DNA of 60,641 nucleotides, filler included, from Platydemus manokwari (GCA_037951405.1; 5 parts of 5 records of this genome joined end to end with filler, not necessarily neighbours in it), one strand, 5' to 3'. Positions 7,890 to 60,641 are shown, counted from the first letter of the whole stretch. A program made the numbers and translations. The notes: generated from the letters alone by a model not told the origin.

Positions 7890-7892
<3 letters not shown>

Positions 7893-7920: not shown

Positions 7921-7924
<4 letters not shown>

Positions 7925-12476: not shown

Positions 12477-12708
12477 CGATGAGGAATAAATTTGGTTGGA
12501 ATAATTAATAATGTAATTATTTATGAATTAATATTATTATTATGTTATTGAAATTGTTTTAATAATAATTAATAAATAATAATTTATATGAAATCGATAA
12601 CACTGATCTTAATATTACAAATCGAAATAATAACAAAATAATTATAATGCAAATATTAACATAATAATATTATTTATAATTAACATAATAATATTATTTT
12701 CCTCATCG
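12477..12708. mobile_element. Possible MITE: ~230-bp AT-only core bounded by the inverted repeat cgatgaggaa / ttcctcatcg
   Basis: 10-bp perfect inverted termini. The interior is much more AT-rich than the flanks. No TSD established. Confidence 0.35.
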
Positions 12709-14420: not shown

Positions 14421-17400
14421 CATAATAAATCTATTCTATTCTTTCAAGATCCAGCACGGAATTACAAATTTGACGTGGAGATACTCTTAGAATTTCAATA
14501 AAGTGAGTTTCCAATCAGACATATGGCCAATATTTTTAATTCGATGGCAGCAGAATTTGATAATAATAGAAGTTTACTCTATGTATTTCATCATGCTTTC
14601 GATTTACAATTGTAATAAATTTATTTTTTAGAATAAATTAGATTCAATATCGAATTTGTCACAATTTAGTGATATTTTATTTAATTGGAGATTATTATGC
14701 TGAGAGGAGCTACATCGAGATCTATCCTCTAATTCATTACAGATGTGTATAAAATTTGATTATCCAATTGTTATTACCATCTAATACACTCTCATTGACT
14801 TTTCTTTGGTGTTTGATTTGATTTTTATATTTTGAAATTTATATAGGCAGACATATGTCATTACTTTCGCTCAAAATTTCAACCTAAATAATATGATTTG
14901 AATTCTGATTATAAACACTCTAAACATTATCCTTTATGAAATACAGTCCAACATCTGGTTCAAATTTCGATAAGCAGGTCGATAAAAATGACAATTTACC
15001 AACCGTAATTTACCAATTTACCAATGATGTTGCGAGCCTATTTATATGGCTTTTTATTCAGGGCTGACAATTAATACACAAAAATTATTTTTATATTATT
15101 AAATAAAAACTAATATTATTATACATCAAGACAGGGTGAGATTTTTACAATATAACAAGGGTAATAATAAAAATTCATGCAAAATATACACAAATGGATA
15201 CAATATCTTTAGATTATTGTCGCAGTGGATAGATTATTTCACAAAACCTCCTTATAATCACAAATTCATTATTTATTAGACTGTTATCCCTTTTGTGTTG
15301 GTGTGTTCTATAATTGAATTTTCTGAAAAAATAATTGATATTCAGTTTTTATATTTCAATTCAGCTATATTTGAAAATAATTCACAATATTGGTAAATGT
15401 TACTATTTGAGAATTATTTTTCTATATTTCATCATCTAAGAACAATGCTATCATTTTGCTATGAAATGTGTTTTTCCTAACATACACTATATATGGATTA
15501 CAATAAAATATTTTCTATCAATTTGTTCATAGCAGCATAACTGTTACCATTAAAATTATTATCAAAAAACTTTTTCGATTATAAACGATAACAATCACAC
15601 TATAAATATTTATGATAGCAGCTCTGATAACAATGATGTTTGACTTTCTGAACAGTATCATAGCTCTATTGTTATTTTATAAACTAAAAATTCAGCATTG
15701 CTCTATAAGTTTTTTTCAAAGTGGTTTCTTCTAACGATAACATGACTACAATCATAAAAAATTAATAAAATAATAATAATACAACTCTAATATTTATTAT
15801 TAAATAAATTATAGAATTATACCACAAATGATCTACATGAATTATGATGCGAAAATTAATCCATAGACCTAGTATTAGGAATAGGAATAGCATATTACAT
15901 TTGCAGCCACTGTTAGACTTCATAGAGGCTTAGCTTCCACAACGATTCTAATAGAGTTTTATGAAAAATCTTAGAATATTCAATTTATGTCCTTGATTAT
16001 TCTGGTTATGTTCCGTGACAAAATTAGGAATATGTTTACAAAGAAATGCCAATCAACTAGAAAACCAAAGAAAGTTATACCAACCAAGTGTAAAAAAAGT
16101 TAAAATCGAGAGGCGAGGAAATTTGGATTGCAATGGAGAGAAATTGGAAATACTTACATTGACAATGCTTCTAGAAAAATAACAGTAAGGACTGGTAAAT
16201 ATGATATGTTAACCTAAGAGAATTACGGTATTAAGTGGGCTAAGTCAACTTATTGATCTTCCTCAATGTTCTATATAGCATATATCGATTAAATCTTTTT
16301 ATTTAACACACATTCCTAATTTGCACAACAATATCTATTTCGGAACAAATTATTATTATCATAATCATTAGATTTCAGTATCAATATTGAGCCTCAATGA
16401 ATTGACTTAACTGATAAATAACAGTGAATAAATACAATCCTGACTGCATGTCACTTTCTTTGAATCGTCTTTAATAACTTGACATGGATTTTTGCATTTA
16501 AATGTTACAGAGTGCGAATTCTTTTACTCAAATGCATGAATATTTGAAACTTGTGAATTTGATGTTCAGATGAAAGTGGTCGATATTAATTTATGAATTG
16601 ACCACTTAAGATGTCAAATGAAAGTTTTATTAGAATCTCATTTATATATACGAGAGTCATTTAGAAATAAACCGAAATGGTAGCGATAAACAAAGAAGAA
16701 AAATTAAACCCCAACCATTAAATGAGTAATATCTAAGACATATCCATTGATATCAAACCGGGTCTTTGTTCCAAATACAAGGTAATGAAATATGAAAATA
16801 AATCTTTTATGACAAAATGATGATAAGAAATAATTATCTTGAGTTTTTTATTTTTTATATTTTCTATTTTCTATCGAACACAATTTTAAAAGAAAATGAT
16901 TGTACTATTAGACCTGCGATGATTTAAAATTTAGGAACGCTTAATAAATTGGTGATTAAGTTGCTTATATAGATTAGATGTTTAAATAAAATGAACTCTC
17001 TGGTTTGGAAATCCATTATTGCATGTATAAAATATAACGCAAATATTTAATGTATAAAATAGTAGGCAATTATATAACTGTGAAACACGCTAAAGCCACA
17101 ATTTATTAAATACTGGTAAATTTGCTATCTAATATTATTAAAAATCAATTGGCTGAGACAGTGTTATAATACCCGACGTCTAGATTCTATTTTTACATTT
17201 GCATGTTCTGGGATATTGGAAAACATCCTTTTCATTGAATTTTCTATCGCATTCAATTGACATTGTAAAGAAGACGATGTTTTTCTCTTCACAATTGTTG
17301 CTATCGCTCAAATATTTACTGGAAACTTTTCCTGATACATAGGCACTTACAAATAGATACTCCGATAAATAGATTAATATTGATATAATGATGTGTTCCG

Positions 17401-20152
17401 GTTTTACTTTATTTCCTGTTTTATATATATAAGATAAGTTTAAATAACTTTATATTCTAATATTTCATTTCCAAAATCAAATAAGGTTTTCATCGATCAA
17501 TGATATGAAATACTGTGAAAACTGCACTTTTCTGTGAATCACTTATTTAACCAAATATCACGATTTTATTTATTTTACGACGTTTTCCGCCTTCTCTTAA
17601 AACAAGCTCCATCTTTACGGTCACTAACAATAAGGATTTTATTGCCTAAGAGAATTGAATTACAACTTTTAGGTCTGACTTGAATCCTATAATTCAATAA
17701 CACCCTTCGTCCTGGTATGGGAATCTAGGATAACTTGTACCTTCTATCATACCTGAAAATTTCGATATGTTATTTACCATATTTTCGTTAGACATTATCT
17801 TGGCCGCCACTTCAGAATTTTCTTTTTTAATGTTGTAAATGTTGAGATGTATTGGTTTATCATTACTTGGGTCAGTGCTGGCTTGGTCATTGCACCAGTT
17901 GGATCTTCAAGATTTTTAGTGCTTGAACACATTTTACTCAACGAATTGTATAATCTAGTTGCATATCTTTTTTCATATTATCGAAGACCTTTTCAGGACT
18001 CATTTGTTGCACTTCTTGATTTTTCTATGCGATAGTATTTCTACATTGGATTGGTGTCAGATATTTACGTATATCAATAGCTTTGTAATGTTTATTCTCA
18101 AGAACAAGGATTATTGAATTTAATTATTTTATCATTTATTTGGATACTGGTTTTTGGTAATCTACTATTTTAATGTTACTATGATGTTACTAATTCTTTT
18201 GGATGGCATTCGATCTGCAAAAAGTTTCATCAGTTTATTCTTGAGATTTTTAAGATTAACCAGGTATGACATGTTTCTTGTCATTGTAAAATTCCAATGG
18301 ATTTTTACTTAGCCAGTCGTGTATTTTTTCTTCTTATATTCGATTTATATTTATCTTTGTAAGTGTAAATTGATTTGGTGTTTTTTAAATTTAATTTCAG
18401 AAAACTGGTTAATATAATTATATTTGTACGTTTGAAGCTGCTTTTAAATTAAATATAAATACGTCCAATTCAAATATAGAATATAAATAATTCAAAATTT
18501 GAGATGAGAATAAGAATGTTATTCGAAATAAATTTAAAATGTTTACTTTTTATTTTCATGGGGACTTGTATACATGTTATTTTTAAAAACTGTTTTTGTG
18601 GTTTGCATCAGTAAGAATTTATAATTTCATTTGTTTAAGTCTATTTTTTCTTACGATAAAAATGTTGATGTTACCATGGTTACTACGACAATAGTTGGGC
18701 TGAATAATATCTATGCAATGCTTTGTTACAAATTCTTCTTCATAAATCAATAGCAACCTAAATGAGAATTATTTTTACACGTTTCAAATAACGACATTGT
18801 GAAAACTTGACATACATGATTCTGTTGTCGATTATTTTCAATTTGCTATAGTTACTTGACTTCTGAGATATAGTTGTGATATTACTAAGAAATGGATTTT
18901 CAAATATCTCACCACACAATATTTTAAATTTTCTGTTCACTATCAACAATTATAAATAGTTGGTAGTAACAGCCATTCGTCATATTTTTTCTGAAGATGA
19001 GTATCAGTAGTTATACTTTATTTCTCGCTATTTATTTGTTGAGTAAGATTTTGAATTTTATGTCACTTAATATTCTTATACATTAATTTCCACACGAAAT
19101 GGAACCTAACTAATTTCCATTATTATTTCTTTAATAAATTTAAATTTTTGTACAACAACATAAGCTAAATTGGTAAGTCCGCATTTAAAATTTGTTATAA
19201 TAATAAAACAAAAAGCAAATACCAGAGTGAAAATAATTCAGATATTTATTGAGAATTCTAAATTTGCTGATTGTTAATCTAAATAATTTTTGACCAGTTT
19301 ATAATAAACTTGAAAGAAAAAAGCAAATAATTATTGTTGAACCGTGGGTACAATTTGGCGTGTTATTAATTTCAGTTTATTTGAGTTTTTCTTATTAGGA
19401 AATTGTTTGAATAGGTAATAATTATATATTATGATATGTTAAGAGACAAGTCCTAAGCAAATCGTTTAAGTAATTTATAGATTTGTTAAGACAAGTACTT
19501 TAAAGTATTTATAATCTATATAACTATTAAAAAAGAAATGATTGATAAAATAGTACTGGATTCCCTCAGATCATGTAAATAAAAGTTCAATAAGTTACTA
19601 CTTTTATACGTCAATGATTTTAAATATACCTTTATACACGGAAACGTTGGACTGAAATTCTCAATGTGCAAATTCAATATCGAAGTTAATGGACCAAACT
19701 AGACCCTTAGTAATATTGGGTACGTGGCCTTTTCAAGATGGTTTTTCCGAGGTAGGCTCGTTGAATAGGGGGAATATATGATATAACACACTAAATGTAT
19801 TTGAGACTTAATTATCTTACGTGATAAGAATATTTTTTATTCTCAACGTATATCATTATAGGGCATATAATTGATGGCAAAATCAATCTTCGTCAATTAA
19901 CACACTATAGATTGTAGTGGTTTCTTACAGGCAGTTGTAGGGGCATTTAATTTTTTTACTGCCTTATATATATGGTTGCTGGGTCATGGGATAAATATGA
20001 GTTTGAATAAAAATGCGCGTTTGATTTCATTTTTATTGTGACGATATTTCACAAATTTAATGGGATTATTCTCCACACGGGTATTATTATTTTTGATATT
20101 TTAAAATACGGGTGATAATAAGTCTTGTTAAATAAATACTTTTGATCACAGG

Positions 20153-22581
20153 ATGAAAATAATTTTTTATTATATTTTATTGTCCAATTTACCATAAAAC
20201 AGTATTTAGATATTTCATTGATCGATGAAAAGATTCAGACACACAGTAATATAAAAACATTAAAATTGACCAATTGCTATGGATAACAAAAATTCCTAAG
20301 TATAGTGAGACAATTTTAAATATATAGTTTTAAATAACTACTACGTTGCTTGGAAATATTGTCTTCCAAAGTAAAAGATTAAATAATTTAAAAGTTTGTA
20401 GAATCTTCTCTTTAAATAATTGATTAATAATATGGAATATAAAACAAGTTAGATATTTTACTTTAGATGATGTCAATTATTTTTAGATTGCTCTCGAAGC
20501 ATTGCAATCAACTGCAGCGTTTGTCAAAGCTGTATTGAAAGTAAAATGCAAGTCCAATCTAATTGCTCATTTTGTGTATCAACATTACATAGAAAACCAG
20601 GAATGAAATTTAATACGATAAATAAATATTGTTCATCGAATTGTAAACCACCAGTTTTTGATAAAAATAAAACGATTATTTGTTGCAGCACCGATCATTG
20701 TAATGACAACAATACTGATTATTCCACTGATTTAAGTAAGAATTTCAGATATTTATAAACGAGGTATTAAATTGAAAAATATGAATAATGATAAATTCGA
20801 AATGCAATTATGAATGTTACAAATAACGATATTTTGCTTAAGACAAATTGGTGTTTTATCGATTATATTTATATTTATTCATTAATTAATGATTTTTACC
20901 TTATATTAATATTAAACTTTTCAAATATGGTTACTTGTATATTATTTCAAGTAATATCATTGTCAAATGAAATTTCTAGAAATTACTGTTATTGATTTTA
21001 GAGTTTATTTATTACATTTTTAATTTAAAATTTGTTACCATTTTAGATTTACATTATCTACTTCGGTGTTGGGCTTGCGTCAATTGCAATGGAATTCGAT
21101 TCGGAATTTACAGAGATTGCAAGTTTTGTCTATTAACAGAGAAAACATTAGATGCAGCAAATAAGAAAAAGACACAATCGGGTTCGTGTGTTGAAAGATG
21201 CGACGAAAGCATTGCAGATTCAACAACATCATTTGTTTGTTGCAATTTCGATCAATGCAATTTCAAAAACTTGCCCAGTGATTTTCATAATTTAATTATT
21301 ATTTTGTGATCAATTCATATATACAATTAAAGATTTTATTGGTTTACCATTTTTAATAACAAAAATCTATTTTTAGGATATCCAGGTATTGTTTGTTGGG
21401 AATGCCAAAATTGCACTTACAGTGACAAAAGACGTCACTTTCTCAGTAATTCCTCGTATTGTTTAACTGAGATAAAACGAGATCAACAAAATAGAATCAC
21501 GCTTCACCAAATCTGTTCAAAGACCTGTCAGTTGTCCAAATCCAACAATTCATCTGTTATATCTTGTTGCAATTATTATTTTTGCAATTCTTATAAGAAA
21601 GAGAACATAACATGTTAGTTTTCGTTTGTTATTTAATGAATTTTTCCGATAAACATTGGACTTAGGAAAACAAAACAGGTTTGATTCAGTAATATTAATG
21701 CTTTTGTTTTTAATATCTTAATTCTGAAATAGATGGCTATCAAAGAAATCACAAATACATTATTTTAAAGAAAATCTTTTATAAATTCTAGAAATAATTG
21801 TCAAAGAAAAAGTGTTAAGTCAAATCTTAAATTGATTTAACTGTTTTTGATAAAATAACATCACATAAATATCGATGGCATATAATAATGAAATCAGTGT
21901 AATAAGCACAAAATCATCTCATGTCGTACGAATAATCATGACCATCTCCTAGTAATAATTTTTACTATAAATACATGCCTTAATTTATTATTACCAATAT
22001 TCCCGCAATTCCCCGAGATTTTTTTTCTCAAAAGTCAATAACTATTTATAAGTATCATTATCAAAAGCTTATAAGTTTTTATCACATTGAGATAGAGAAA
22101 AAATATCGATAATGCTTTGTTTTATTTAGACTGGCCACTCAATGAAAATATAAGTTGTAAAGTTTGTCAGAATTGTGGCGAAATCGATATTATCCAAATC
22201 AATAAAAATTGCTCAGTATGCATGACAACTTCGAGTAAATCTGAAGTTTATTTTAATGAAAAGTTTTCTACAAAATTATGTTTGAAAAAGTGTCCAATAA
22301 ATAATTCAAAAAACAATCGAACAATATGTTGTAACACAAATTACTGCAATGAAGAAGTTCCTGGATTCTTGAAAGGTAAGAAATAATTTTATGTGTTAAC
22401 TCGATATGATAAGCGATTCTATTTAGTGTTTCATTATACATAAGAATCAAATAATAATTTGTTATTAACTGTTATAAAGATATCCTTGACTAAAGGAAGG
22501 AAATTTTATTTTATATTTTGATAATGGAGTTAAGTATGATAAATATTTGAAATAACGTTACCCTCATGATTTTTGTTTATC

Positions 22582-44379: not shown

Positions 44380-45469
44380 GTANNNNNNNNNNNNNNNNNN
44401 NNNNNNNNNNNNNNNNNNNNNNNNNNTTAATTAATTAANNNNNNNNNNNNNNNNNNNNNNNNNNNNNNNNNNNNNNNNNNNNGTTCAGCGTTATAACAAT
44501 TTGTGTTAATAAAATACCTGCATAAAAACATGAATAACTTTTGACTCAACCTGGTATATCATAATAAATAATAACTAAATAATATAGAAAACTATTTAAT
44601 TATCAATGATATAAAATTAATTTAAGTGCAAGAATAAAAGTCATAAATGAAGTTTTATAAGGTGCAAATTGAAAGATACCACCTACGCCACCTTCGAGAT
44701 GAAGTTGCATAAATATCTACGCATTTCGTCAATAACATACAAAAATTTGCAAGGTGATAACTGGTATCGAACAACGATAAACATATATTGAAATACCTTC
44801 ATTGAAACGGTAACTAAGAACACATCGATTAATTTTCGTGACAAATATTTCATATTGATTCCAGACTAGAAATTTGTGCGGAGAATGCTAGGCTCAATTA
44901 TTAATTTTTCTTGTCAATCATTTGTCAGTAATATCTCATTTAAATTTATGCAATTTAATATTTAATAAGCACATTAACTAATTATTATTATATTATTTAA
45001 TAAATCAAAGTTAATAATTGTTATATATATATAAATATTTATTTTAAAAATAAAATTTTACTTATAAAATTTTTAAATTCTTTTAAAACATTTTATATAA
45101 AAATATTAAATTTTATAATTTATTCAATTCTTTTAAATCGTTATTTAAAAGTTGTTATTTTTAATTATTTTAATTAAACCTCACAATATTATGAGGTGAT
45201 TATAATATTATTATTAAATAAAAATTAAATATGATTATTAATATTTTATTCATTGTTGTCCAGACTTGTGTCTAACTGCGACAAAACACCGCAAGGCTCA
45301 TTGAATGTTATTCATATTGGTTGTTATACTCATGGTTGGAATTATATTAAATCTACAATATATACAAGGCTAATATAAAGACCAGCTCATAAAATCTACA
45401 ATGCCCACAAAACATATTTAATAAAAATGAGAAACATCTGATCACAAAATCAATATATGACATTCGATA

Positions 45470-48400
45470 TCAGACACCATGAATGGAAACATTTGTAACG
45501 ATTCCATTCAACTTGATATCCCAGTCAGTTCCTTGAGGTAATAATGAGGTAATTCCGATTCGCTCAGCCAGAGTTCCATCGGAAAAAACAGCCCATATCT
45601 AAAGTCCATATTACTAACAAGAGATTATAATAAAAACAAAACAAACAAACCAATCGTTGCGAGGAACATGAAACATGGATAACATTATCACAAACATGAA
45701 TCCAATGAGTACCAACAGTAGCTGTGAACATATTGCCATCAAATATTCTAACCCATAAATGATCGCTAGTATCAACAGCCCATAGCGTCAGATTATCACC
45801 ACTTGCCAACTATCACACACAATCAATCATAATTTTCATCCACAAACAAATATTCTACTTCTTTGAATTTTCCATTACGTCGATCATGTTCGATTTTATC
45901 CCAATCTTTTTCCGATATTTTTGTCACATCTCTAATATTGGTAAATTTCAATCGCCATATAAATCCCGAAATGCAAATCACCCAAATCGTTCCATAGATA
46001 TTGATATTGATCGATAATAATTTTAATTCACATCTAATATGGAACCAAAATAATCCCTACATCGAATCCGATTCAATAAACCACCACACAACACATTCAT
46101 AATTCTCACTTCCATATTATTCACCGACACACCCTTTCTTATAAACAATTTATTTTTCCTATTTATACCAAGAACCAAATGGTTTTTATCATCGTCTTGA
46201 TCAATTCCTGGAAATATTGCGATATCGATTAATTTCAAACTGTTATTCTTGACTTCTTTCCAAGGTCCGACAACACTAGTTTTATATGTTCTAAATAAAC
46301 ATCACTATTAACGGGACTATATATCATGTTTTGTTTTTAATACCGACTCCATTTCCGATATCTATAATTCTTATTCCAAGTGATATTATCATCAAATCTA
46401 CATGCAACCAAATGGATAAGAGATATTATTCAATGATCGTCATACTTGGAATTGATTCCACAACCATATTGCCAATTTTCTGATTCCGTATTTTCCGATG
46501 ATGATTTATTTACAACAATCGACCATTCATCCGACCATTCCCATCTTTTCGATAACGGTTGAATCATATGTTTATCAGCGATAATATTGCCATGTTCATC
46601 TGTCCACATATATGGCTCAAATATCCTGGCACAAATATAATCAACGATCAGATAAACAACTCAATTTATTGAATAATCGAATTATATTCAATAGATAATC
46701 AATAAAACAAATACATATACATTCAATTAAAATCAATAATTATATATAATTTATTACTAATAAATAACTAATTGATATTCGATTAATAATTAAATTCCAT
46801 TTTACTGCTCAACCAATTCTATATCAAATACTGTATATATCTCATAATTAATGGCGAAACAAATATAAATTAAAAAACCTAAGACCAACATGGACATATC
46901 AGTAAGTAAAAGCTTCGATTTTTGATATTCCATCGCAAACAATGTCTTATTATCCGAAACCAGATACAAATGCTCCTTGGAGCTACATAATGGACCAAGA
47001 TACGAACCTCCCCATCCTGGAGAATGAACCCATGCCACTCCATTGAAACCAATGGCCCACGTGATGAAACCTTTGGCACCGGTTTTAATAAGATTAAAAT
47101 GCCCCCCATCCTGTTTTGAAGACAAATTCATCAAACTATCTCACTAATCGTATTTTTATATACTTGCTGCCAACTCATATAATTGAATTTATTAATTGGA
47201 CAAGAAAATGGTTCGTGGAATTTATTGAGTATCCAGGCTCTCACAGATTGTTTATCGACATTATTGGTTGTTTTATTATTGAAAGCCATAAAATTAACAG
47301 CCATCAACCAATCCTCCACATCAGTCTCTGACGAGAACCTAAAAATCGCTGACGATATATTAGCTAAAAATACAGAACATTTGACAGAAATCTCATGAAA
47401 TAAGAAGATCATACATTGGTTGGATGAAGAGGATAACATTTTATTTTTCATAAAAATAATCATCGACGAACAAATATCCGACCGATAATGGGTATCGGTG
47501 GCAAAATGTCCACGATATTTACTGAGACAAACAATATCGTTCGATTCAATGAAGAAAGGAATCTAGAAAATTTACCAAAACGCTAAACAATTACAGGTAA
47601 TGAAAACTAAATTACGTAATCAATATTAAACATGTCTGTATGGTTGACCTTAATATGAATAGTCGAAAATGTAATTTTGTTTCTGATTTTGTGATGCAAT
47701 ATCAATGATGCTGACAACCAGATTTTTCTATTGATTTCCTCTGAGAAACATAGAATATAACAACTTGATGCTTTACTCCAAAATGTCTGCAATAGATTTC
47801 ACAAAATTATCAATAATTTCACAGAACAATAATAGATTTACTGTGCATGCACCACTATACAGAAATAAATAAAAACATTGTAACTCAAGAAACGTTCAAC
47901 ATTTTACACTATTTCAAAGAAAAACATAATTTCAGCAATTATTTACACCAGTTGTCGTAACTTAATTGCCACATCAATCAAAATCATAAATTGTAAATCT
48001 CGTAACAAATTTTTTAAAAAATATTAGATAATTTTATATGATTTAGAATATGATACCAGTAGAGAAATTGATTTTTATCTTGAAAATTCAAATTTTTCCT
48101 TTTTAAAAATATTCTATGATCTCATAATACAGATTCGCCTATCACTGAGCGGAATTTGTATTAACTCTCAAGTACTAACAAGATCAAAATAAAGTCGCCC
48201 AATACGAAATAGTTTCCACAAACTATCGAATTCGTTAAACGTTAATCAAAACGAATTCTACAAACCATTTGTCAATTTACCTGCGAAGATCAATTTATGT
48301 AAATTTTATTTAAATAATCGAATTCGATAAACTAGAACAAGAAACTGATGCTCATATTTTTATTCACTGACCGTGTTCTAGAACTAGCTTCAAAATGTCA

Positions 48401-51400
48401 CGCGATAATTATAGATCTTTGGGGACATTATCTGTAGTCACTCGGCTTTGACACGGAGATCCATGCGACACTATCGGAATCTGTGAGCACATTATGGTTG
48501 GACGTGGTGATCCGAAAAACAAACTTCCACATTGCATCGTCAACCTCAAAATTCTTTTCGATAAGAGCGACAACTTCCTACATCATCGATTTCTCAACTA
48601 AGAGAAATACAGAACTATTACCAAGGTAATCTGCAAGAAATCCAGATTCAAAACTCACCTCGATATCATCTGCATCGATGTACTTAGATCTTAAGACCAT
48701 CACAACGACAAGATCCTAACGAATAACGGACTCGAAAAAAAGCAAATCACGCTTATCTCGAGGTTTCTAATAACAGCATTTTCTCAGAAATGCCTACGCG
48801 ACTTACAAAGCTCATACGAACAAAGGAAACCAAAGAATATCTCCAGCATTGGCCAGCTAAAAATAACAAGTGTATAACAGAACTATTCGGCAATATATCA
48901 AAGGGAGCAAGAAGACTTTAAATGAAGAAATCTTGAATCAGAATATCAGAAATATCGATCTTAAAAATTTAATATAATATTCGATGTGAGGACGTGTGCC
49001 ACCGCGTCGAAAAGACTGTTATGCTTATGTATAATAAATCTTAATTTATTTTGCAAATTATTACCATTCGATACATTAAATAATAACACTAACAGACTTC
49101 ATAAAAATCACATTAAAACAAATAATAAATTGTATTAAAAAATCTATTTCATAATTCATGTCAACATTAACCGAAATTTAATCACAAATTCTAAATATAT
49201 CTTATTACTAATACATCTGTTCATGACTGTTATTGAATTTTGGGAAATAATCAATTTCGAAAAGTAGTTCCTATTACTCCAAATTGAAAATACACAGTTG
49301 AATACTCATAAATTGCTCCTTATATTTGAATACAAAAAGTTTAGGCAAAAATAAATTTTCAATTTCCCAAAATATAAACAAAACTATTAATTTTTCAATC
49401 GATTTTTAGATTTATAAACAAAAATATTAATAAATTGAATCAATATAATTAATAAATGAAATAAAAAAATAAACCATAACACATGCAACTTGATATCAAT
49501 TATCCAATAAATTTATAGCTCGATGATGATTGGATGACACAATAATTTCATTCAGATTAATTTAAATACAACTTTATTTGTGAACACATTTATTCCATAT
49601 CTTGTTTCATTAACCCTGCAGGTACCTGGGTAATTTTCAGTATCATGCAACAATTTGTATATTTAATAATTATCTATTTACTGATTATTTGCAATAAATG
49701 AAAAACCAAAGATTTGTCAGCTGCAGTATCAATTTCATATATATAACACAAAATAAGCAAGCAATGACAATAAGTGATAACTATTACAAAACAACAACAA
49801 CAACAACAAAATACAAGCATTACTTAACCACCACCGCCAGTTAATCAATCTAACAAACTAAATTCTATTCAATGTTTTGTCAACAATTTTAATTTAACAA
49901 ACTTGTTCGAAAGGTGAGGTAAAATTTGAGAATGCCGGGTTTTTATATTCCAAATTATCACGGATTTTCAGAGATTGTGAAATTTTAATCTTCCAATCAG
50001 AATCGCTGTCTAAATAAATTAGACAATCAAACCAATCATTTCATCTTTATTTATTATCTAATTAATTGATGTGAAATGTTGAAATATTTGATCTGGCATT
50101 TATTATATTTAACAGTATTGCATTTTCTGAATTGATTTGATAATTTGAAATCAATTATGAAATTTTATTGATTTTCTATCATCTATCTAGTAATTTGGTG
50201 AATGGAAATAATTATATCTAATGAATTTTTCATTTTAATAATTCTGTACATTCACTGAAACGTTTGCAATGATTAATGGGAAACGACAAGAGAATTATTC
50301 TTGTAAAGGTTGGAATCAATCCTAGATTTCATTCTAGTCATTATTATATATAGGAATTTTACATCAATTATTGGAAATTTCCAATATTTCAGATTCATAT
50401 CTTCTTCAGAAGGAAAAATTATTTATTTAAATTATTATTTATTTATTAAATAAATTATTTGAAATTATATTTATTTGAGAAAATCTTAAAACTCACCAGA
50501 ATTTTTCAAATAAATTTTATGAGATGTGAAAGGCGAAGGAATCCAACTGGCTGGGAGAATATCGGCTTCTAAATACAATCCTGAAGCGCTAAGGCATACC
50601 AAATTGTCTGTTTGGAACTGAAAACAATACATATTAGTGGTGAAAAAGAGGTAAAAGCGAATAAAATTATTGAAACACCAAGAGAACAAACAATTTATTA
50701 ATCATCTCAGGATTGCAAACACTTCCTGTAACTGAGTGTAATTACAAAACATAATATTATACTTAATAATAATAATTATTATTATTGTTACATGAATATA
50801 AATAGTATTTAATCGGATATCAACTAAATACTCACATTTGTCGATTTTTCGAAATGCCACACCAATTTTCCACTCCAATAAACTTTTCCCGGTGTACTTT
50901 TAGATTTATTAGACTTATAAAAAATTTGATTTCCTTCATTTGGTAAAGCAAACACCTAAATAAATTCATATTTTATGAATAACCCAATCACAAGTCAGAC
51001 CTGTCCTGATGCACTACAACTGATAAACCTTATATCAGTTGCCACAAGATTCCAACCGTTGCCAAGAGCTAATTTTGATCTTGTTTCATGGAGATTAACA
51101 TTAGCTCTCGACCAAAGACGACCAAGAGACGATTTCACTAAAATGGAATAAATGCTGGTAGTTAATTGGACAATTTTCTCTTTTTCCCACAAATCATGGG
51201 GCACCTCGAGTTGCATCCAGGAAGTACCTACGAAGAACGGAAATGCCTCAATACAGTTAGCTATCGTATAAAAGTTGTACCAATTGGATTTTTCCATGTG
51301 ATACTTTCGCGGAAATAAATATTGCCAGTGGTTGAGCAAACAAATAGATTTCCTAATGGACCAACGGCTAACGAGATAGCCTTAACGAATTTCGGTAACT

Positions 51401-54400
51401 TTATGTGACACCAATTGGAGCCTTCGGGATTTTGACGATGTACATTTAATCGAAAAAGAATCTTAATCCAGGATAATTTCAGAATTAATTTTAGAACTAA
51501 AAACTTGCCAAATGGAAAAATAATCTTATAATTTGTTCCTACAATTTACATATAAAACAACTAAGTGAACTACGTACAAGATTTTTGAAACCAATCTTTA
51601 ATTTCAGCTGATTATCTTGATTAAATTGACGACTTATCGATACAAATAATAATTTCTAAAGCCATAATAAAATGTGGAATAATTATGAGCAAGGATAAAT
51701 AAGCAATAAACCAGAGTAATTAATAGGAAATAAAACACAAATAATCAATCGAAACGTATCGTTTATAAACAAAAGTTAAATGTTAATGTAGATTGGAAAT
51801 GTTTATAAATTTATCTTTGATGCTGCACGTTAAATGCTTTCATTGATTTTAGTTGAAGCGGGTATTTTAACGAAATAAGATTTATTGATTGAATCATACG
51901 CATTCACAATGGAACATTAGCTAATATGGATTATTCGCTTATTAACAATTGTTAGTATTATGAGAATATGGTGAGTATTTTTTTAACTTATCGATATCAG
52001 TAGAACTTCGAAAACCCTGTCTTTTGATTGGCTGGCTGACTCACTATTACACACCACTTGTCTGGAATATGTTGTAATTGTATTTTGGTTTTCATGTTAT
52101 CGCATAACTCACAATAATAAGATATCGTTTCATGATTCTCAAATTAAAAGATTCACGACGGATATATCCATAGAGCCAGCTTAATTCAATATTTATTACT
52201 CTCATTCCGATCAAGAAATTCTTTATTCTAATAATTCTTACCTTCTATTCTCGGATTCACTAAAAATTAATTACGTCACTAATAAATAATCGATAACAAG
52301 TGATATCAAGAAATTCATGTTTTACAATTGTCTTCATAAATAAATGAACCGAATATCTTATTCAATAAACCAGATAACAACAACCTGTCCATTTCCATTG
52401 ACTACCCAAACAGACAGAAATCCGTCTTTTTGATGAGGCAACATTTCTCCCCCGCAGCCGACGTCGACAATGCCCGAATGGCAGAAATTGATGCATTCTT
52501 CTGCCGATTCAATTTCCGAACAACAATCTTGGCTGCAAGATATTTGAAATGGTTGCGAATCTTGGGCCATATACAGCCATCTATCGTATGCATGGAAACA
52601 GCGATATCGTTGCCAATATCTACGCCTAACATTGCTGGTGAAATATTGTCTTTCAACTTGAAATTTCCGAAGAAAATTCGAAGAATAAACCCAACCCTGA
52701 GTAATGTTGGTAAAATTAAAAGTTATTCAATTCAAGTCAAAGTTGTATTTATTTGAAAAATATAAGTGCAACTTTTATTAGAGTTTTACAACAAGGCCAT
52801 TTACTTCTTGATTTCATATTACATATATTTTTAGTATTGAAGGATTACAACAGCAGTCAGTTTTTTAATTGAGAGGTTTGAAGTAAAAATAATAATTTTA
52901 TTAAGTGACTATTTTTAGCATCGACACTAAAACACGTAATTTTCATTGTATAGCCATTTCTGTTATAGGTTAGAAAACAGTCAAATAGAGCTTAATTAGT
53001 CAAAATTAGTTCAAAAATAGAAATCACAGAAATAAATGGACATCGTCACTTAATTTTAAGTTGCGCTTATTATGAAATTTACAACAATAAAAATAAAAAT
53101 TAGTTGAGACATTTATAATAAATATTTTTTGAGTAATTGTCAAACAAATTTAAAGACGATGTCCAATTGGGTCAATTTCGATACCAATATGGAGAATATA
53201 AATATCTTTTAATCAATAAAAAGATTCTAAGAACATAACTAGCAATAAATAATATCAATAATTTTAAAATATTGATTAATAAATTCCGTCAAAGGAATTG
53301 AGCATATTTAAAATGCCAATGGAGTCAGAAAACAGATAATAACATTTTAAAGTGACCTTAAACGCAATTTGTGCACAACAGGCAGTTACATCACATTAAA
53401 TGTCAGTAGTGTGCAATTTGGCACAGTTCACACAATACCAGAAGAGATGGAGAAATTAAATTGATCAAAACGAAAAATTTATCAAACTAAACAGAAACAA
53501 TAAAAATGGCTAATGGGTAATTTAAATTTTAACCACATTAAAACTATAATTTGAAAAGTATATGTCAACTACATCATTGTCCGTCAGGGAGTTGATTGTT
53601 TACTCTAAAATATAGGTGGAACTTGCGTTGATAAATAAATTTATTAACCGTTTTTTGTTGGACTAGACTAGATAATATATTCTCGATATTCGTATTCGTC
53701 TATAATAATCTTCAGAGGTACATCAGCTTTAATATTAAAATCAGTAACGCATAAATTGAACTCATTTTGCATCATTATACAGTTAATCTATCGTTGTATC
53801 TCTATTTAATCATTGTTTCATCAATGAAGCTTATTTGTTTTTATTTTTATTGATTTACACATGCAATCTATGTTTCGAAAGGAATCAGATAATTGAGGCG
53901 AACAATTCATCAAAATAAATATGTAAAGTAATCAGCACATTAAACGATTAAAAATATCATGCAAAGGGTTTTATTTCAAAAATTTTATTTATATTCATTG
54001 TAGCAGTTAATATTTCGGAAAGAAACTGACATTACAAATTGAAATTAATAATGACCTGTAATATTGTCATTCATGCAACCGCTGATTAACCATGAAACGT
54101 CAAGACCAGCATTAAGTGACTTATTTATTAAAACAAAAACAACCTTTAAAATATTTGTTTTTATTAGCATAGATGTTTTATAATATTCATTATAGTATTA
54201 ATAATCTCGAATAATGTCTTGTGACAACAATACATTGCTAAATAAAATAATAATTTAAATAGTTATAATAATAATAACTAAATTGTAATATATTTACGGT
54301 TAATCGTAAAGCTGATTCAATCCTTAACAATCCCAGCAGATAGATTGCAAACTGACCGGTTTCAAAGTCCTTTTCATTCATCAGTGAGTGATTATATTGT

Positions 54401-57400
54401 ATCAAGAAAACACAGTTTCATAATTAAAAATGTATTCATAAAATAAAGAAGATTTAATGAGAATAGTTTAAATCAGGATATAATGCCATTAAAAACACAG
54501 AAAAACAAAAACATCAGATTTTATTTTGTAATATCAAAGCATAAAGTTCACCGTAACACTGATCATATGATGGATCATTTGAAACAAATCCATTTATATT
54601 ACGTTTACTCTGAATCATCTGAAATTTGATTGTGATTAGTAAAATAACGATGCGCTGTTTTATCCTTTATTGATGAATTAATTGTGATGCTTTAAACAAT
54701 TTTAGCTGCACGCCATTCAGATTCAACATTTCATTGCTAATGTCAAGATGTTGAAATTACAATAAGAAATATTCAGACTATTTATTGAACAACAAATATC
54801 TGCGGCAATATCTGTAAATCACATATTTATTTATCAATCTCAATTGGTTGGTGATGAGAAGTATAAAGGAATTTAATAATCATTTATCAGTGAGATAACA
54901 TATTTTTCTTTCTAAATCAACTCTATCAGACAGCCAATCACGATAATAGCAGCAATTGTGCCAGTAATTTGCGATTTTAAATCACATGACTTTGAATTCT
55001 ATGTTATAATTATCGACTTCAGATTTCAACGAGTTGATCAAATTAATGACAATCAGCAGCATAAACTGGAAGAAGCTCTATTATTAAGCGGTATTTAATG
55101 ATTATAATTGCTATTACAATTTAACTATGAACTCGTCAACGATAAAATATCCATCAGTTATGAAATAGTGACAATGAGCTTCAAATCTAAATTGGAATTT
55201 AATGGATTCGAGAAAAGGATTTGAGTAAAACGCGGTAAAAAATATGAATTAATCAAAAGATTTTGATGAAATTACCAAATATAGTACTTTGTTCAAATTT
55301 TAATGTAATGATTTTTCGTGTATTAATAAATTTGAAAATTTATTAATAGTGATATTTTTATCATGTTTCGATTTAGAATTCAATTTTAGATGAAAACGAA
55401 TAAAAACAGCGAAATTCTATCAGAAAAAACCAAATCACAATTTAATGTCAATTCAATGTGTTAACCATAAAGTCATACTTTAACTTTTATATTTATCTGA
55501 CAATACTTTCCTCTGGGATTGTCACACACATTGACATTGAAAAAGAAAGGAGAAGACATCAAGAAATCATCAAATCTTATATAACAATATTTTTTAAACA
55601 TTTGGTTTTATTATTGATTTTTAAAATTATTTTGTGAAAATTGATTTATTTGTTGATATCTCACATTTTATGATGTCGAATCTGAACTAAATAGAATTGT
55701 TAAACCAAGTTCCAATTCCTAATCACAACCCTTCCAGACGATTTTTTGAGTTTTTAAATTAATTTTTTTTTAAATCATGAATCGAATTGGTTAGTTGCAG
55801 ACATGTTTAATAAACTATTTATCAATTATTTTTTTGATAAAATAATTATAAAAATTGAAAATATCTCACGATCTGTTTTTAATGTTAAAGAAAGAAGTCC
55901 TCATCAATGTTTAATAAATTGCTATTCGACCTAATTCTATCTGTTTATCAAATAATCAAATATTAGATGATTTTAAAGCTCCAGTCCAGCGGTTATCAGT
56001 GGTTTCCTTTTTTCTATGACAACCCCAAAGAAAAATCAATATTACTAAAAATAAGTCATTTACATATCAATGATTTCCAACAAGGAATGAATGGCCTATC
56101 AGATAAGATTATCACATAATAACATTACCTATAAAATACTGTAGTAGTCAAGGTGATTGTGATCAGAAATGGTTTAATCAGCATCACAAAACACGATTTT
56201 TCACATGTAATGGCTTGTACACCCACCATAATTGGGCAACCCCTTTAAAAATGTTTGTCGACACCATTTTGGGTCGCGACCGAGGGGTTGAGAACCACTG
56301 GTCAAGTCTTTATAATATTTTATTTTAAACAACTTAAATTCTTCTGCAGTACTTAAATAAAAAATTCAAATGTTTATTAATAAATAAACGATATCGATTT
56401 TGGCAATGCACTCAACAAATTAAAAATCTCATTTCCTGACCCCCTTTTTCTGAACTTGAGCCACAAATTTGATATTTCAAACAATCACCATTTCATTACA
56501 ACATTCAATAAAACAGATTCCAGATTTTTCAAGTGGTTTTATCAAGTTATTTAATTAAAAATCGTCATGAAATGGCGTTTTATGGCAATAAACATGAAAT
56601 GAAATGAATTGGTCCAGCAAATTTCGTGTAGAAAACATGTGATTTTACTAATTGTTGATTCGTGATTTTCACAATGATAGAGTTCATTCATTTAAAATTG
56701 ATTTGGACGGGATTTGTTTAACGCTTTAATTAATAAAATAAGTTTTATTTAAACAGAATTGCGATTCTCCTTTCAATTTCATTGACAGACAGGATTTGAT
56801 GAATGTTAATTTGGGAAATAATTAATTAATTAAAATTAATTAATAAATAATTTATCATTAATGTTACCAATTAATTATTCAATTAAAATTAATTTAATTA
56901 CTTAACTCATTAAAAATAAATCATTTCATTGATTACATTTAAAATAATTTTTAAAAAAAATAACCTCATTTGTTGGTTCTCCGTCAAATTTAAGCTTTTT
57001 CGTCCAATCTCCTTCCCATTTCCATCGACTTGATGGGAGATTAAATGATTGTAAATCGGTTTTCAATAATTTTCCATAATAATTCGGAGTGACATATTCG
57101 AATGGATCGGAATGTAGTAAATTTTTCGAACTAAATTGGCCGGAACGTTTACGCTACATAAACATTAAATTCAATTGTAGTTGATGTCAGATTTGATGTT
57201 AAAATAGAACCTGATTTTCAATTACGACTTCAGGTGTTCGGATTACAATTTCAGATTTAGGGATATAGAGATATAATTCATTGTCTGCACCAATCGACCA
57301 CACACACCATGATGCTGCAGCTAGTAATTTAAAGCTTTTAATATTACTAATTGAACAATTGATATGATTCCATGATGTATTCCACGATGACAACAGAAAT

Positions 57401-57441
57401 ACATAACCGTTATTATCAATAGACCATAAATAACACTTTGA
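45470..57441 (-). CDS. TECPR1: Tectonin beta-propeller repeat-containing protein 1 orthologue (TECPR repeats, two DysF domains, PH-like region). Exons include 57441-57211, 57153-56965, 52696-52385, 51461-51281, 51227-51001, 50955-50836, ~50617-50497, 50009-49903, 47786-~47719, several between 47565 and 45651, and last exon 45598-45470
   Basis: Spliced translation gives LWSIDNNGYVFLLS...ENQ|RKR...LPSSRWKWEGDW...FDGEPTNE|GWVYSSNF...VRRRYWQR...GFLSVWVVNGNGQ|ILFR...NPEGSNW; WKIKISQSLKIR...FEQ|TFW; WQQ|DGGHF...WAIGFNGVAWV...GWGG; a second DysF; and the end ...PQGTDWD...HGV*. This is collinear with vertebrate TECPR1. The start exon and one or two internal junctions are unresolved. Confidence 0.93.
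48361..48900 (+). pseudogene. Degenerate copy 2 of the unknown ORF at 6560-7264, inside a TECPR1 intron
   Basis: Shares tcactcggctttgaca (48438-48453 vs 6970-6985 rc) and ctcagaaatgcct (48783-48795 vs 6653-6665 rc). Translations align: YL*SLGFDTEI vs YLQSLGFDMDI, and FKTHLDIICI vs FETHLDVICI. Confidence 0.75.
55997..56300. mobile_element. hAT/Charlie-like non-autonomous element (~300 bp) in a TECPR1 intron
   Basis: Left end CAGTGGTTTCC; right end gggtcgcgacc...GGTTGAGAACCACTG. No matching 8-bp TSD seen. Confidence 0.45.
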
Positions 57442-57968
57442 CTAAAAATAAAGAGAATGTTAATTTACCGTATTTGAATAATCACTAAAACGTTTAAGTG
57501 ATAACAAAACATAAATTTGGTTACACTAATAAGTTAAGAAATTATTTTCTCATTAACACATAAAACCAAAAATATCAAAATTATTATTTAAATAATTAAA
57601 TCGAACATTGAATGAATATAAATTTAAAAATGTTCACTGTGGGTGTGATTATTTAAACTAATGAAGTAATTCAACTTTGAATTTTATATTCTTGAAAAAT
57701 CTAAATAAAATCCTGTTAAATAAATAATGGATTATGTAATTTGAATATAAGAAAATTTAAGAGTAAGTGTTTATGATTATTAAATTTATAAATATTTGAT
57801 TAAGGTTTGAAAACATTTATTACTTAAAGAATTAATTTAAAAATATTTTATTAGTAAATTAAATATGTATAGATATTCAGTATTCTATTGGCCTTGATTT
57901 GTTTAACTACATTTATTTCAGTTATTCTTGGTAATTAAAAGTAACGGTTTGAATTTTTAATTTCAAGA

Positions 57969-60641
57969 ATGAAGAGCACTGTATGGCATTATTGATATTA
58001 AACCATGCATTAATTGTTTAAATTTATCATATAATTAGGAAAAATATAGCTCTATAAGTGAACAGGTTACATTTTAGTATCATGAATTTCATTTAAAAAT
58101 TTGTTCTTTAGTTAAATGAAAAAGAAGACAAAGTAATTTAACTAATCATAATTAACCAATCATAATTTATTCAGGTTAAAATCCGAGAGCGAGTTTAATT
58201 TTGATTTATTACATTCACTCTATTAATAAATTTCTAATTCAGGCCCAATCTATGGTAAGTAAATAAAATAATCAAAATGATTTGTTTCAAAGTTAAAACT
58301 ACATTGAAAAGATTTGTTTGTTTTCTATAGGAAAAGAAAAAGCTCACTATTAAACATTTGAGAGAAGAAATTGAACTCCTCAGATCTCAGTTAAGGCCGA
58401 AGCCATTGGATAATTTATTGAATGTTGTTTAATCAAATATTTCGAATGATGTCGAATTATTTTGTTTGTTTTGTGGCGTAAAATAATTTGAGAAAATTTT
58501 GAAAACATTATAAATTATATTTAAATATAAATATCAATAAATTATAAAAATAATTGAAAGAAATTTTATTAGTAAAAAGTAATTTTGAAATAACAATGAA
58601 AATTAATTTTTGATTTAGGATAATATATATTTAAAATTTGTATTTATTAATAGATTAATTAAATTTTTATAATAATTATTATAACTAATTAATATTATTA
58701 ATATTAATAAAAAACTAATTAATAATTATTTTATCGTAATTATATATTTGTATTAATTATTTTATATTATCATATTTTTAAAACATTTATATATAATATT
58801 ATTTTTTAGTTTAAAGTTTATTATTTTTAATATTTTATTATATGTAAAATAATATTTATTATGAATAATATTGTTTTTTATTTATATTATAATTATCATT
58901 AATTATTTTTATCCGAAAGGCAGTGTTAAGTGCGGAAATTTTAAACTTTTATCAAGTTTTATGAAGTATTTCTAATGCTTTATCGGATAAAAATAATTAA
59001 TGATAAATATAATAAAAATTAAATATAATATTCATAATTAATATGCAATGCATTAATAATATTATTTTTAAATATAACAAAATATTAGAAATAATAAATT
59101 TTAATTTAAAAATTAATAATATTAATATAATTGTTAATTGCACTTATTTTAATTTCTTATTTTAATATTTAATCATCAAAAATTATAAAAATGGTAAATA
59201 TAAAGATTATGGGATCTTTCATTAAAGCATTTACAAATTCCTACTGACAGACATTGTCGTGATGCTTTCGAAGATAAATAATTAATTAGGATCTCGAATT
59301 CAATATTTATTAATTTGATTATTGCAGTATTCTTACACATTGTCATTTAAATCAAAATCGTTATTTTATCACACAATCGTTGCTACTTAATATAAATTAA
59401 TTTGATTTCTTATCAGCAAATAACTCATTTTATTTGTAATCTTCATTGATACTTCAAGATGATTAGATGAGAAACTCTCCAATTTTTATTACTGTTTACA
59501 ATAAATAAAGGATTTTTTATCATTTAAACAATAAAAATCTATTTGATTTGTAACCGTTGTTTTCGATTGAAACAGTGAAGATCAGTAAGATAAATAAAAT
59601 CTGTAAGTTAATAATATCTAATTATATAAATAAGTTTTTATCGAAACATAGAAATTGTAAATCTGGTTAAAAAATATTTTGAAAATTTTCTTTTTTAAAA
59701 ATAAAAATTTATTTACAATCATCAGTTCCAATGACTTTATTTCGCTATAAGTTCATAGATAAAGGAATCTATTATTAATCTTGTCTTATTTTCTTGAGAT
59801 TCAGTATAATCGTTAATAAAAATTTTCATTTTCATTATCGATATCCGTCATTATGATCATTGAAATTAATATCAACATTTTGTTTTTTATTTATAACGAT
59901 AAATTATTAATATTATTTGTTTGCGTTAGTTTCATCCATTGGATAAATTGAGATTTGAAATTGAAGAACTTGAAATGAAAATAATAAAACAAAAATCTCA
60001 ACAAGCTAGATTGGAAGACAAATATCACTTTCTTAAAAGTGCTCATGCATTGGCAATTAAAAGTTTAAAAAATTCCCACACAGAAGCCATGGATTCTGAA
60101 GAATTTGTATTAATGGCAAAAAAAATTGATCTGAAAAAAAATGTTTTATTTTTACTAAAATTATAATAATTTATTTTCAATTTCGATTTAAGGAACTTTT
60201 GTCGAAGAGAAACTTTATTAAAGAGTTGCGAATGGTAGGATTGAATAATGTACCTAGTAAAGTTGTGGAAGACTGTCAAAAGACATGCTTGGAATTGGTA
60301 GAATAATAATAATAATGATTCTAACATCGTATTTATTTTTGGTCGTGTAATTTTAGGACTACATACATAAAACTACTCGAGAATGTAAGAATGAGGTCGA
60401 TGATGTGATTTTAGAGATGGAAGAGCATAAAAAAGAATTGAAAACAGCTTCGGATAGGTATGAACAAATTAAGGAATCAAATAAAGCTAAGGAAGTGTGT
60501 GATAATTTGCATATTTTAAGAAACCATTATTTTTCTTTTCAGGAAGAGATAGAGAAAATCATCTCGGAAACACATAATTTAACTAAATTAATTCAATCAA
60601 AAGCAAACGAGGCGACTGATCTTGAGAAAGTTGCTAAAGAC
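57969..60641 (+). CDS. Coiled-coil protein with N-terminal micro-exons, runs off the window. Exons 57969-57980, 58039-58065, 58112-58132, 58175-58192, 58243-58254, 58331-58423 (or stop at 58432), 59930-60142, 60193-60297, 60357-60494, 60543->60641
   Basis: All junctions are GT-AG and phase 0. The joined frame is open and E/K-rich: MKST|EKYSSISEQ|LNEKEDK|VKIRER|AQSM|EKKKLTIKHLREEIELLRSQL...|FHPLDKLRFEIEELEMK...|ELLSKRNF...|DYIHKTTRE...|EEIEKIISE. There is a loose resemblance to outer-dynein-arm docking (CCDC151/CCDC63/114-like) coiled coils, not established. Confidence 0.75.

What the first reader, a model, noticed from the sequence alone, without database searches (positions are those of the whole stretch)
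57969..58432. Hidden array of five consecutive phase-0 micro-exons (12, 27, 21, 18, 12 coding nt) building a protein N-terminus
Seen: a stretch with no ORF-track call contains purine-rich islands, each bounded by AG and GT. They are ATGAAGAGCACT (57969-80), 58039-65, 58112-32, 58175-92 and 58243-54, separated by AT-rich introns of 58, 46, 42, 50 and 76 nt. Every coding island is a multiple of 3 and they join into a stop-free charged helix (MKST-EKYSSISEQ-LNEKEDK-VKIRER-AQSM-EKKKLTIKHLREEIELLRSQL). Known: runs of symmetric micro-exons define the Schistosoma micro-exon genes (MEGs), which make variants by exon skipping and are mostly secreted. Inference: this is a MEG-like architecture on an apparently non-secreted coiled-coil protein. 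Independent skipping of the four internal micro-exons could give up to 16 in-frame N-termini that alter coiled-coil length or register. Gene predictors would very likely miss it.
Basis: partly seen in the sequence, partly recalled or inferred. Interest (0 to 1): 0.85.

Follow-up and report, generated by a model that had tools for sequence, protein, structure and literature searches.

The report
Probable five-micro-exon gene start
Five tiny coding pieces (12-27 bases) split by 42-76-base introns very probably form the first 30 amino acids of an unclassified coiled-coil protein; no transcript confirms them, and the proposed likeness to schistosome micro-exon genes does not hold.

Summary
All are multiples of 3 and stop-free, starting at ATG 57969, and they join in frame to an exon at 58331.

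Bare AG/GT chains of this kind arise by chance in this AT-rich DNA. This chain does not look like chance:
- With splice-site quality included and the chain anchored on exon 6, none of 125 real decoy anchors has even two such exons, and none of 60,000 simulated sequences reaches five.
- Its 30 codons score like real exons (P = 0.002).
- Base composition alternates as in the gene's verified exons and introns.

A 925-bp metagenome contig from a relative (40-54% amino-acid identity) confirms the four downstream exons and their intron positions. It also suggests that exon 6 splices to 59930. It stops short of the micro-exons.

No RNA run exists, so splicing is inferred, not shown (confidence about 0.65).

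The protein has no Pfam, PDB or ODAD match. It fails three of the four testable micro-exon-gene (MEG) criteria: no signal peptide, mostly ordinary exons, and tiny rather than long introns. Exon skipping is untested and unlikely with such short introns. This is an ordinary gene with an unusual, easily missed 5' structure.

The parts
57513..57968 (.). Intergenic spacer (456 nt) between the start codons of two divergent genes; presumed shared promoter region and 5' UTR of the plus-strand gene
   Evidence: Inferred. The TECPR-like gene on the minus strand starts at ATG 57512 and the plus-strand gene at ATG 57969. Composition is A = T = 0.41, unlike exons or introns. An in-frame TAA lies 9 codons upstream of ATG 57969 (read).
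57969..57980 (+). Micro-exon 1, 12 nt, ATG AAG AGC ACT (MKST); proposed start codon with A at -3
   Evidence: Donor ACT|GTATGG. It is part of the chain chosen by the generic-matrix gene finder.
57981..58038 (+). Intron 1, 58 nt, GTATGG..AATTAG
   Evidence: Generic acceptor score 3.3, against a 90th percentile of 0.9 for all AG sites. If retained, it stops after VWHY*.
58039..58065 (+). Micro-exon 2, 27 nt (EKYSSISEQ)
58066..58111 (+). Intron 2, 46 nt, GTTACA..CTTTAG
   Evidence: If retained, it stops after VTF*.
58112..58132 (+). Micro-exon 3, 21 nt (LNEKEDK)
58133..58174 (+). Intron 3, 42 nt, GTAATT..ATTCAG; the shortest intron of the locus; contains a 14-nt tandem repeat
   Evidence: If retained, it stops after VI*.
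58175..58192 (+). Micro-exon 4, 18 nt (VKIRER)
58193..58242 (+). Intron 4, 50 nt, GTTTAA..ATTCAG; the weakest donor of the chain
   Evidence: If retained, it stops after V*.
58243..58254 (+). Micro-exon 5, 12 nt (AQSM); its last codon, ATG 58252-54, is the start codon in the rival minimal model
58255..58330 (+). Intron 5, 76 nt, GTAAGT..TCTATAG; the best splice sites of the chain
   Evidence: Both splice-matrix versions of the gene finder use it once the intron penalty is relaxed.
58331..58423 (+). Exon 6, 93 nt (EKKKLTIKHLREEIELLRSQLRPKPLDNLLN). It has no in-frame ATG and is closed upstream by the TAG of its own acceptor.
   Evidence: The donor AAT|GTTGTT matches GAT|GTTGTT at the 5' end of the relative's contig L001.
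58424..59929 (+). Long intron, 1506 nt, swollen by a nested AT-rich palindromic repeat (58778-59137)
   Evidence: One search gives the inverted repeats. One search shows depth of about 90-120 against about 12 nearby. The matching intron in L001 is at most about 190 nt.
59930..60142 (+). Exon A, 213 nt, conserved in the relative at 47% identity, with the acceptor at the same codon
60193..60297 (+). Exon B, 105 nt, 54% identity to L001, same borders
60357..60494 (+). Exon C, 138 nt, starting with the invariant DYIHKTTR; same borders in L001
60543..60641 (+). Exon D, cut off by the edge of the piece

Best explanation
The plus-strand gene sits head to head with a TECPR-like gene. It starts at ATG 57969 and builds its first 30 residues (MKSTEKYSSISEQLNEKEDKVKIRERAQSM) from five phase-0 micro-exons of 12, 27, 21, 18 and 12 nt, separated by introns of 42-76 nt. 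These join to exon 6 (58331-58423). Exon 6 joins across a 1.5-kb repeat-swollen intron to the conserved exons at 59930, 60193, 60357 and 60543, which encode a lineage-restricted, charged, helical (coiled-coil-like), non-secreted protein of no assigned family.

Introns in this genome are about 50 nt, so each is probably recognised as a unit (intron definition). Exon size then does not matter, and the micro-exons are most likely always included.

Shown here:
- the sequence pattern;
- its departure from chance;
- exon-like codon use and composition;
- conservation of the downstream exons and their intron positions.

Inferred: the splicing itself, the start codon, constant inclusion, and the coiled-coil fold.
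For: - Exact borders and frame.
- Anchored chain test: 0 of 125 real decoy anchors have 2 or more exons, and 0 of 60,000 simulations reach 5. Threshold-free score test: P from 0.008 down to below 1/3000.
- Codon log-odds is +5.2 bits against a null of -6.1 +/- 3.7, P = 0.002. The per-codon value of 0.17 compares with 0.20-0.43 in the verified exons.
- Micro-exon composition (A .47, T .19, G .20) matches conserved exons A-D (A .43, T .25, G .19). Spacer composition (T .43, G .10) matches the three verified short introns (T .48, G .12). The intergenic DNA has A = T.
- The five acceptors score 0.8-5.2 on a generic matrix, against a background 90th percentile of 0.9. That is better than three of the four acceptors of the conservation-supported downstream introns.
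- A gene finder with a generic splice matrix returns exactly this chain.
- An upstream ATG is needed. Exon A has a conserved acceptor, and residues conserved with the relative lie before its first ATG. Exon 6 has no ATG and is closed upstream.
- Weak GTT donors are normal at this locus. The exon A donor AAT|GTTTTA lies at the same place as AAT|GTTTTT in the relative, and the TECPR-like gene uses gttatt, gttggt and gtttgt.
- The intron sizes fit the local mode of 45-59 nt.
- Microexons with flanking introns of about 50-60 nt splice without the helper PRP-40 in C. elegans (PMC8378409).
Against: - No RNA evidence at all. The only public run holding this DNA is a DNA run, apparently of the same sample.
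- No cross-species evidence for the micro-exons. The only relative found is a 925-bp contig that begins 14 nt before the exon-6 donor.
- The same gene finder, using a matrix trained on 22 local introns, does not choose micro-exons 1-3. That matrix is noisy.
- Two donors (GTTACA, GTTTAA) are poor, and intron 3 (42 nt) is shorter than any other intron seen here.
- The chance-test thresholds were set after seeing the chain.
- The exon-6 link to the relative rests on one shared 8-mer, with a chance of about 1% by my own post hoc estimate.
Confidence: 0.65

Rival explanations
1. Minimal model. Only intron 5 (58255-58330) is real. Transcription starts somewhere after about 58140 and translation starts at ATG 58252-54, giving M-EKKKLTIKHL... 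Islands 1-4 are promoter or 5' UTR DNA that mimics exons by chance.
For: - Intron 5 has by far the best splice sites of the chain (GTAAGT, TTTTCTATAG).
- The locally trained gene finder returns exactly this model at penalty -7.
- No ATG lies between 58175 and 58252 to interfere.
- A single ATG-bearing upstream exon arises by chance in about 15% of simulations.
Against: - It leaves unexplained four further islands with top-decile acceptors, correct spacing, lengths in multiples of 3, an open frame and exon-like codon use and composition.
- ATG 58252 has T at -3, while ATG 57969 has A at -3.
Confidence: 0.2
2. The micro-exons are real but belong to a separate small gene. Its 63-residue product ends at TAA 58430-32, and the conserved exons from 59930 onward are a second gene with its own start.
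For: - Read straight through, exon 6 ends in ...NLLNVV*.
- The gap to 59930 is 1.5 kb, about 25 times the usual intron length here.
- Candidate ATG exons exist inside that gap, for example ATGAGAAACTCTCCAATTTTTATTACT|GTTTAC near 59467 (read).
Against: - Exon A has an acceptor at the same codon in both species, so it is an internal exon.
- The relative's contig starts with GAT|GTTGTT about 190 nt upstream of its exon A, matching our AAT|GTTGTT. The stop that follows in our sequence is not kept there (VVINHTQSNL*).
- The extra length of our intron is a repeated palindromic element.
Confidence: 0.07
3. One reading: a MEG-like or troponin-T-like diversity device, in which the four internal symmetric micro-exons are skipped independently to give up to 16 N-termini.
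For: - All exons are phase 0-0, so any skip keeps the frame.
- There is a precedent: TNNT3 exons 4-8 at the 5' end are of one phase class and alternatively spliced (PMC2447309). MEG exons are also mostly multiples of 3 (PMC10526429).
Against: - Every intron seen in this gene is phase 0, including the ordinary downstream ones, so symmetry is not special to the array.
- The flanking introns of 42-76 nt favour intron definition and constant inclusion (PMC8378409).
- There is no signal peptide, no family of paralogues and no long introns.
- No isoform data exist.
Confidence: 0.06

Closest known systems
Schistosoma micro-exon genes (MEGs)
   Same: A run of very short exons whose lengths are multiples of three. 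Automatic annotation has trouble with them (PMC10526429).
   Different: MEGs have 10-20 micro-exons making up most of the coding sequence, introns of 100-5000 bp and an N-terminal signal peptide, and they form secreted, parasite-specific families (PMC10526429). Here there are five micro-exons (90 nt) ahead of ordinary exons, introns of 42-76 nt, a hydrophilic N-terminus and no paralogues.
5' mini-exons 4-8 of fast skeletal troponin T (TNNT3)
   Same: A block of small exons of the same phase at the 5' end of a gene for a helical, heptad-repeat protein, encoding a charged N-terminal extension (PMC2447309).
   Different: In TNNT3, alternative splicing has been shown by experiment, and the exons sit among long vertebrate introns. 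Here nothing is known about isoforms and the introns are minimal. There is no sequence relationship.
Constitutive microexons flanked by very short introns (for example C. elegans tcer-1)
   Same: Exons of 27 nt or less, flanked by introns of about 49-58 nt, are included without the microexon helper PRP-40. This fits intron definition (PMC8378409) and is the splicing mechanism proposed here.
   Different: Those are single microexons with transcript proof. Here five stand in a row and none has transcript proof.
Unannotated coding microexons in plant genomes
   Same: Very small coding exons are commonly missed or misplaced by annotation pipelines and need dedicated tools (PMC8831610).
   Different: The plant cases are mostly single exons of 1-15 nt inside conserved domains, confirmed by RNA-seq and homology.

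Membership tests
Schistosoma-type micro-exon gene (MEG) | Exons very short and mostly multiples of three | tested here: met
   The exons are 12, 27, 21, 18 and 12 nt, all phase 0. The definition is taken from PMC10526429.
Schistosoma-type micro-exon gene (MEG) | Micro-exons (10-20 of them) make up the bulk of the coding sequence | tested here: not met
   Only 90 nt lie in micro-exons. At least 648 nt of the visible coding sequence lie in exons of 93-213 nt.
Schistosoma-type micro-exon gene (MEG) | N-terminal signal peptide; secreted product | tested here: not met
   The highest 9-residue mean hydropathy in the first 61 residues is 0.01, and 43% of the first 30 are charged.
Schistosoma-type micro-exon gene (MEG) | Long introns (100-5000 bp) between the micro-exons | tested here: not met
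   The introns are 58, 46, 42, 50 and 76 nt.
Schistosoma-type micro-exon gene (MEG) | Protein variants made by alternative splicing of the micro-exons | not testable with these tools
   No RNA run holds this locus.
Outer-dynein-arm docking coiled-coil proteins (ODAD1/CCDC114, CCDC63, ODAD3/CCDC151) | Detectable sequence similarity to family members | tested here: not met
   Pfam gave no family above cut-off at E up to 10. PDB sequence searches with exon A, B and C-D queries gave no dynein-docking chain, and the best E-values were 0.02-0.6, to unrelated proteins. phmmer against 1.84 billion representatives found only one fragment from a close relative. Only about 245 N-terminal residues are visible, so remote kinship is not excluded.
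Spliceosomal GT-AG coding exon (general) | Junctions present in mature mRNA | not testable with these tools
   Searches turned up only a DNA run.
Spliceosomal GT-AG coding exon (general) | Position and peptide conserved in a relative | tested here: inconclusive
   Met for exons A-D. Weakly met for the exon-6 donor. The relative's contig ends before the micro-exons.

The most novel reading that the evidence does not exclude
The five symmetric micro-exons form a combinatorial cassette array, like the 5' exons of troponin T, but in a genome that splices by intron definition. They would tune the length or register of a coiled-coil N-terminus. This would be exon-skipping diversity where the gene architecture predicts none.
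Probability: 0.06. Interest if true: 0.6.

Novelty: new member of a known kind. Interest (0 to 1): 0.3.

Why it matters
If the model is right, it is a clean example of how far a short-intron genome can fragment a coding region: five introns within 90 coding bases. It also shows why ORF-based or standard gene callers would give this protein a wrong or missing N-terminus. That matters for annotating this poorly sampled AT-rich lineage. It does not change what is known about splicing or about micro-exon genes.

Tried and rejected
- RNA evidence: the look-up of sequencing runs (kind rna) listed one run, not on record as RNA. Its contigs match the window with no differences and even depth across exons and introns, so it gives no transcript or polymorphism information.
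- Relatives:
  - phmmer with exon A against 1.84 billion representatives found one true hit, P0001, on a 925-bp ENA contig. The second hit (P0002, 1737 aa) is a repeat protein matched over 30 residues and was discarded.
  - A search with P0001 found only itself.
  - The first large TECPR-like exon (80 aa, the gene's second coding exon) found nothing.
  - Two JGI metagenome scans, with exon A and exon C alignments, found nothing.
  - The joined 61-63-residue N-terminus was never searched, because it has no reference and I did not type it in.
- Family assignment: Pfam, two Atlas searches, three PDB sequence searches and Rfam on 55000-60641 gave nothing significant. Sub-threshold hits to CENP-F, CENP-U and Spc105 coiled coils were treated as composition noise.
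- Tandem duplication of an exon-plus-intron unit of about 70 nt: rejected. Tandem Repeats Finder reports only a 14-nt repeat inside intron 3, and the five units do not align.
- The sigma-70 promoter scan is not relevant to a eukaryote.
- Organism identity: not established. The third Atlas search, on a TECPR-like exon, gave only generic PH-domain clusters.
- Structure and complex prediction were not used. The joined sequence cannot be submitted, and a coiled coil would not be informative.

Full report
**Setting.** The piece (44483-60641) is eukaryotic DNA with about 25% GC.

The minus strand from about 57512 down to about 45470 carries a multi-exon gene with tectonin/propeller repeats. Pfam gives Hyd_WA at E = 3.4e-12, plus the Tectonin domain. 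From memory, its N-terminal exon resembles TECPR1. Its introns are mostly 45-53 nt.

The finding lies on the plus strand, 456 nt from that gene's inferred start codon. The two genes are therefore divergent neighbours.

**Observation.** Two points need adding:
- The sixth exon (58331-) has no in-frame ATG, and the TAG of its own acceptor closes it upstream.
- Read straight on, it ends at TAA 58430-32. Two phase-0 donors (AAT|GTTGTT at 58424 and GTT|GTTTAA at 58427) lie just before that stop.

**Downstream gene and the only relative.** phmmer with the exon at 59930 against 1.84 billion representative proteins found one real relative. It is a 134-residue ORF fragment on a 925-bp metagenome contig (L001).

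L001 carries counterparts of four exons, with amino-acid identity as follows:

| Exon | Coordinates | Identity to L001 |
|---|---|---|
| A | 59930-60142 | 47% |
| B | 60193-60297 | 54% |
| C | 60357-60494 | 40% |
| D | 60543-60641+ | not measured |

- The introns lie at the same codons and have diverged in sequence. These exons and their phase-0 introns are therefore real.
- Exon A begins at a conserved acceptor in both species. In the window, residues conserved with the relative lie before the first ATG of exon A. The coding sequence must therefore start further upstream.
- L001 begins with ...GAT|GTTGTT about 190 nt upstream of its exon A. This matches AAT|GTTGTT at the end of our exon 6, and the stop that follows in our sequence is not kept there. 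I estimate the chance of such an 8-mer match at about 1%, post hoc. This is weak support for exon 6 splicing to 59930.
- The extra length of our intron (1506 nt) is largely a nested AT-rich palindrome, present at about 8-10 times single-copy depth.

**Are the micro-exons more than chance?**
- With AG/GT borders, a multiple of 3 and no stop alone, the answer is no. Chains of 4-6 arise repeatedly in this piece.
- I then scored sites with a generic splice matrix. I required the chain to end at the exon-6 acceptor and begin with an ATG, and used the chain's own weakest sites as thresholds.
  - None of 125 other anchors on either strand has even two exons.
  - In 60,000 simulated upstream regions, built from the region's own composition, 2 or more exons occur in about 0.6%, 3 or more in 0.02% and 4 or more once. 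Five never occur.
- A threshold-free version, using the best chain score, gives P = 0.008 at the harshest intron penalty and 0 of 3000 at two milder ones.
- Separately, a codon table was trained on exons A-D and the TECPR-like gene. It gives the 30 micro-exon codons +5.2 bits. Stop-free pieces of the local non-coding DNA average -6.1 +/- 3.7 bits (P = 0.002).
- Composition alternates as in the verified parts of the gene. The islands are A-rich and G-rich like exons A-D, the spacers are T-rich like the verified introns, and the intergenic DNA has A = T.
- With a matrix trained on only 22 local introns, it returns either the minimal model (ATG 58252 plus intron 5) or a partial chain. This disagreement is the main computational caveat.

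**What cannot be shown.**
- No RNA run holds this locus. The single run found behaves as DNA of the same sample.
- No second relative could be found.
- The splicing, the start codon and the inclusion level are therefore all inferences.

**Mechanism.** The most likely reading (about 0.65) is a constitutive 5' array.
- Introns in this genome are about 50 nt and splice-site information is low. GTT donors occur even at conserved introns.
- Such introns are generally recognised across the intron. In C. elegans, microexons flanked by introns of about 49-58 nt no longer need the microexon factor PRP-40 (PMC8378409). Exon size should therefore not limit splicing here.
- Retaining any one of the five introns gives a stop within 1-4 codons. 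Retention cannot make protein variants.
- All nine introns seen in the gene are phase 0. This fits a Lys/Glu/Gln-rich protein that offers many AAG|G and CAG|G sites, which is my inference. The symmetry of the micro-exons is thus not a special design.

**Comparison with known systems.**
- *MEGs.* The locus fails three of the four testable MEG features: most of the coding sequence in micro-exons, a signal peptide, and long introns. It shares only the lengths in multiples of three (PMC10526429).
Nothing here tests that idea.
- *Missed microexons.* That annotation misses microexons is well documented (PMC8831610).
- *Protein family.* The protein matches no Pfam family or solved structure, and no dynein-docking protein. 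Only about 245 N-terminal residues are visible before the edge of the piece.

**Verdict.** The pattern is real and non-random, and is probably a true 5' micro-exon array of an otherwise ordinary, fast-evolving coiled-coil gene. It is a useful annotation point but not a new kind of system. The MEG analogy and the 16-isoform idea should be dropped unless transcripts show otherwise.

Noticed in passing
window 55297-56490: High-copy repeat in the long intron of the TECPR-like gene. Contig depth in run X1 reaches 1,400-21,000, against 12-25 for the flanking DNA, with many variant copies and joints. It contains a GGGTCGCGACC...GGTTGAGAACCACTGG motif. Probably a transposable element or SINE family.
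   Followed up: partly
window 58778-59137 (within 58481-59276): Nested AT-rich inverted repeat inside the 1.5-kb intron. Arms of 84 nt are 77% complementary and arms of 50 nt are 90% complementary, around a 66-nt centre. Depth is about 90-120 against about 12 nearby. It is MITE-like and explains why this intron is about 8 times longer than in the relative.
   Followed up: partly
window 57512-57442, minus strand: The TECPR-like gene also seems to start with a tiny coding exon: ATG TTT TGT TAT CAC TTA AAC, 21 nt (57512-57492). A 50-nt intron GTTTTA..TTTTAG (57491-57442) follows, before the conserved exon at 57441. Tiny first coding exons may be common in this genome.
   Followed up: partly
window 57969-60641, plus strand: All nine introns of the plus-strand gene model are phase 0, and the four downstream ones sit at the same codons in the relative. 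This is unusual for nine of nine, and is probably linked to the Lys/Glu/Gln-rich sequence.
   Followed up: no
window 58400-58420 and 59933-59950: A short motif recurs on either side of the long intron: PKPLDNL at the end of exon 6 and HPLDKL at the start of exon A. It could be a chance match or a trace of an old local duplication.
   Followed up: no
L001 (ENA ERZ27256860, k141_5130048), 1-925: The only relative of this gene found in about 15 billion predicted proteins is a single short metagenome contig. The window's own lineage seems almost absent from public protein collections. The first large exon of the TECPR-like gene also found no fragment-sized homologue.
   Followed up: yes
window 45300-57441, minus strand: Splice donors at this locus are very degenerate: GTA, GTG, GTT and GTC all occur at +3, for example gtctgt, gttggt and gtttgt. 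Acceptors are mostly TAG preceded by a T/G-rich tract. Standard splice models trained on other animals would do poorly here.
   Followed up: partly
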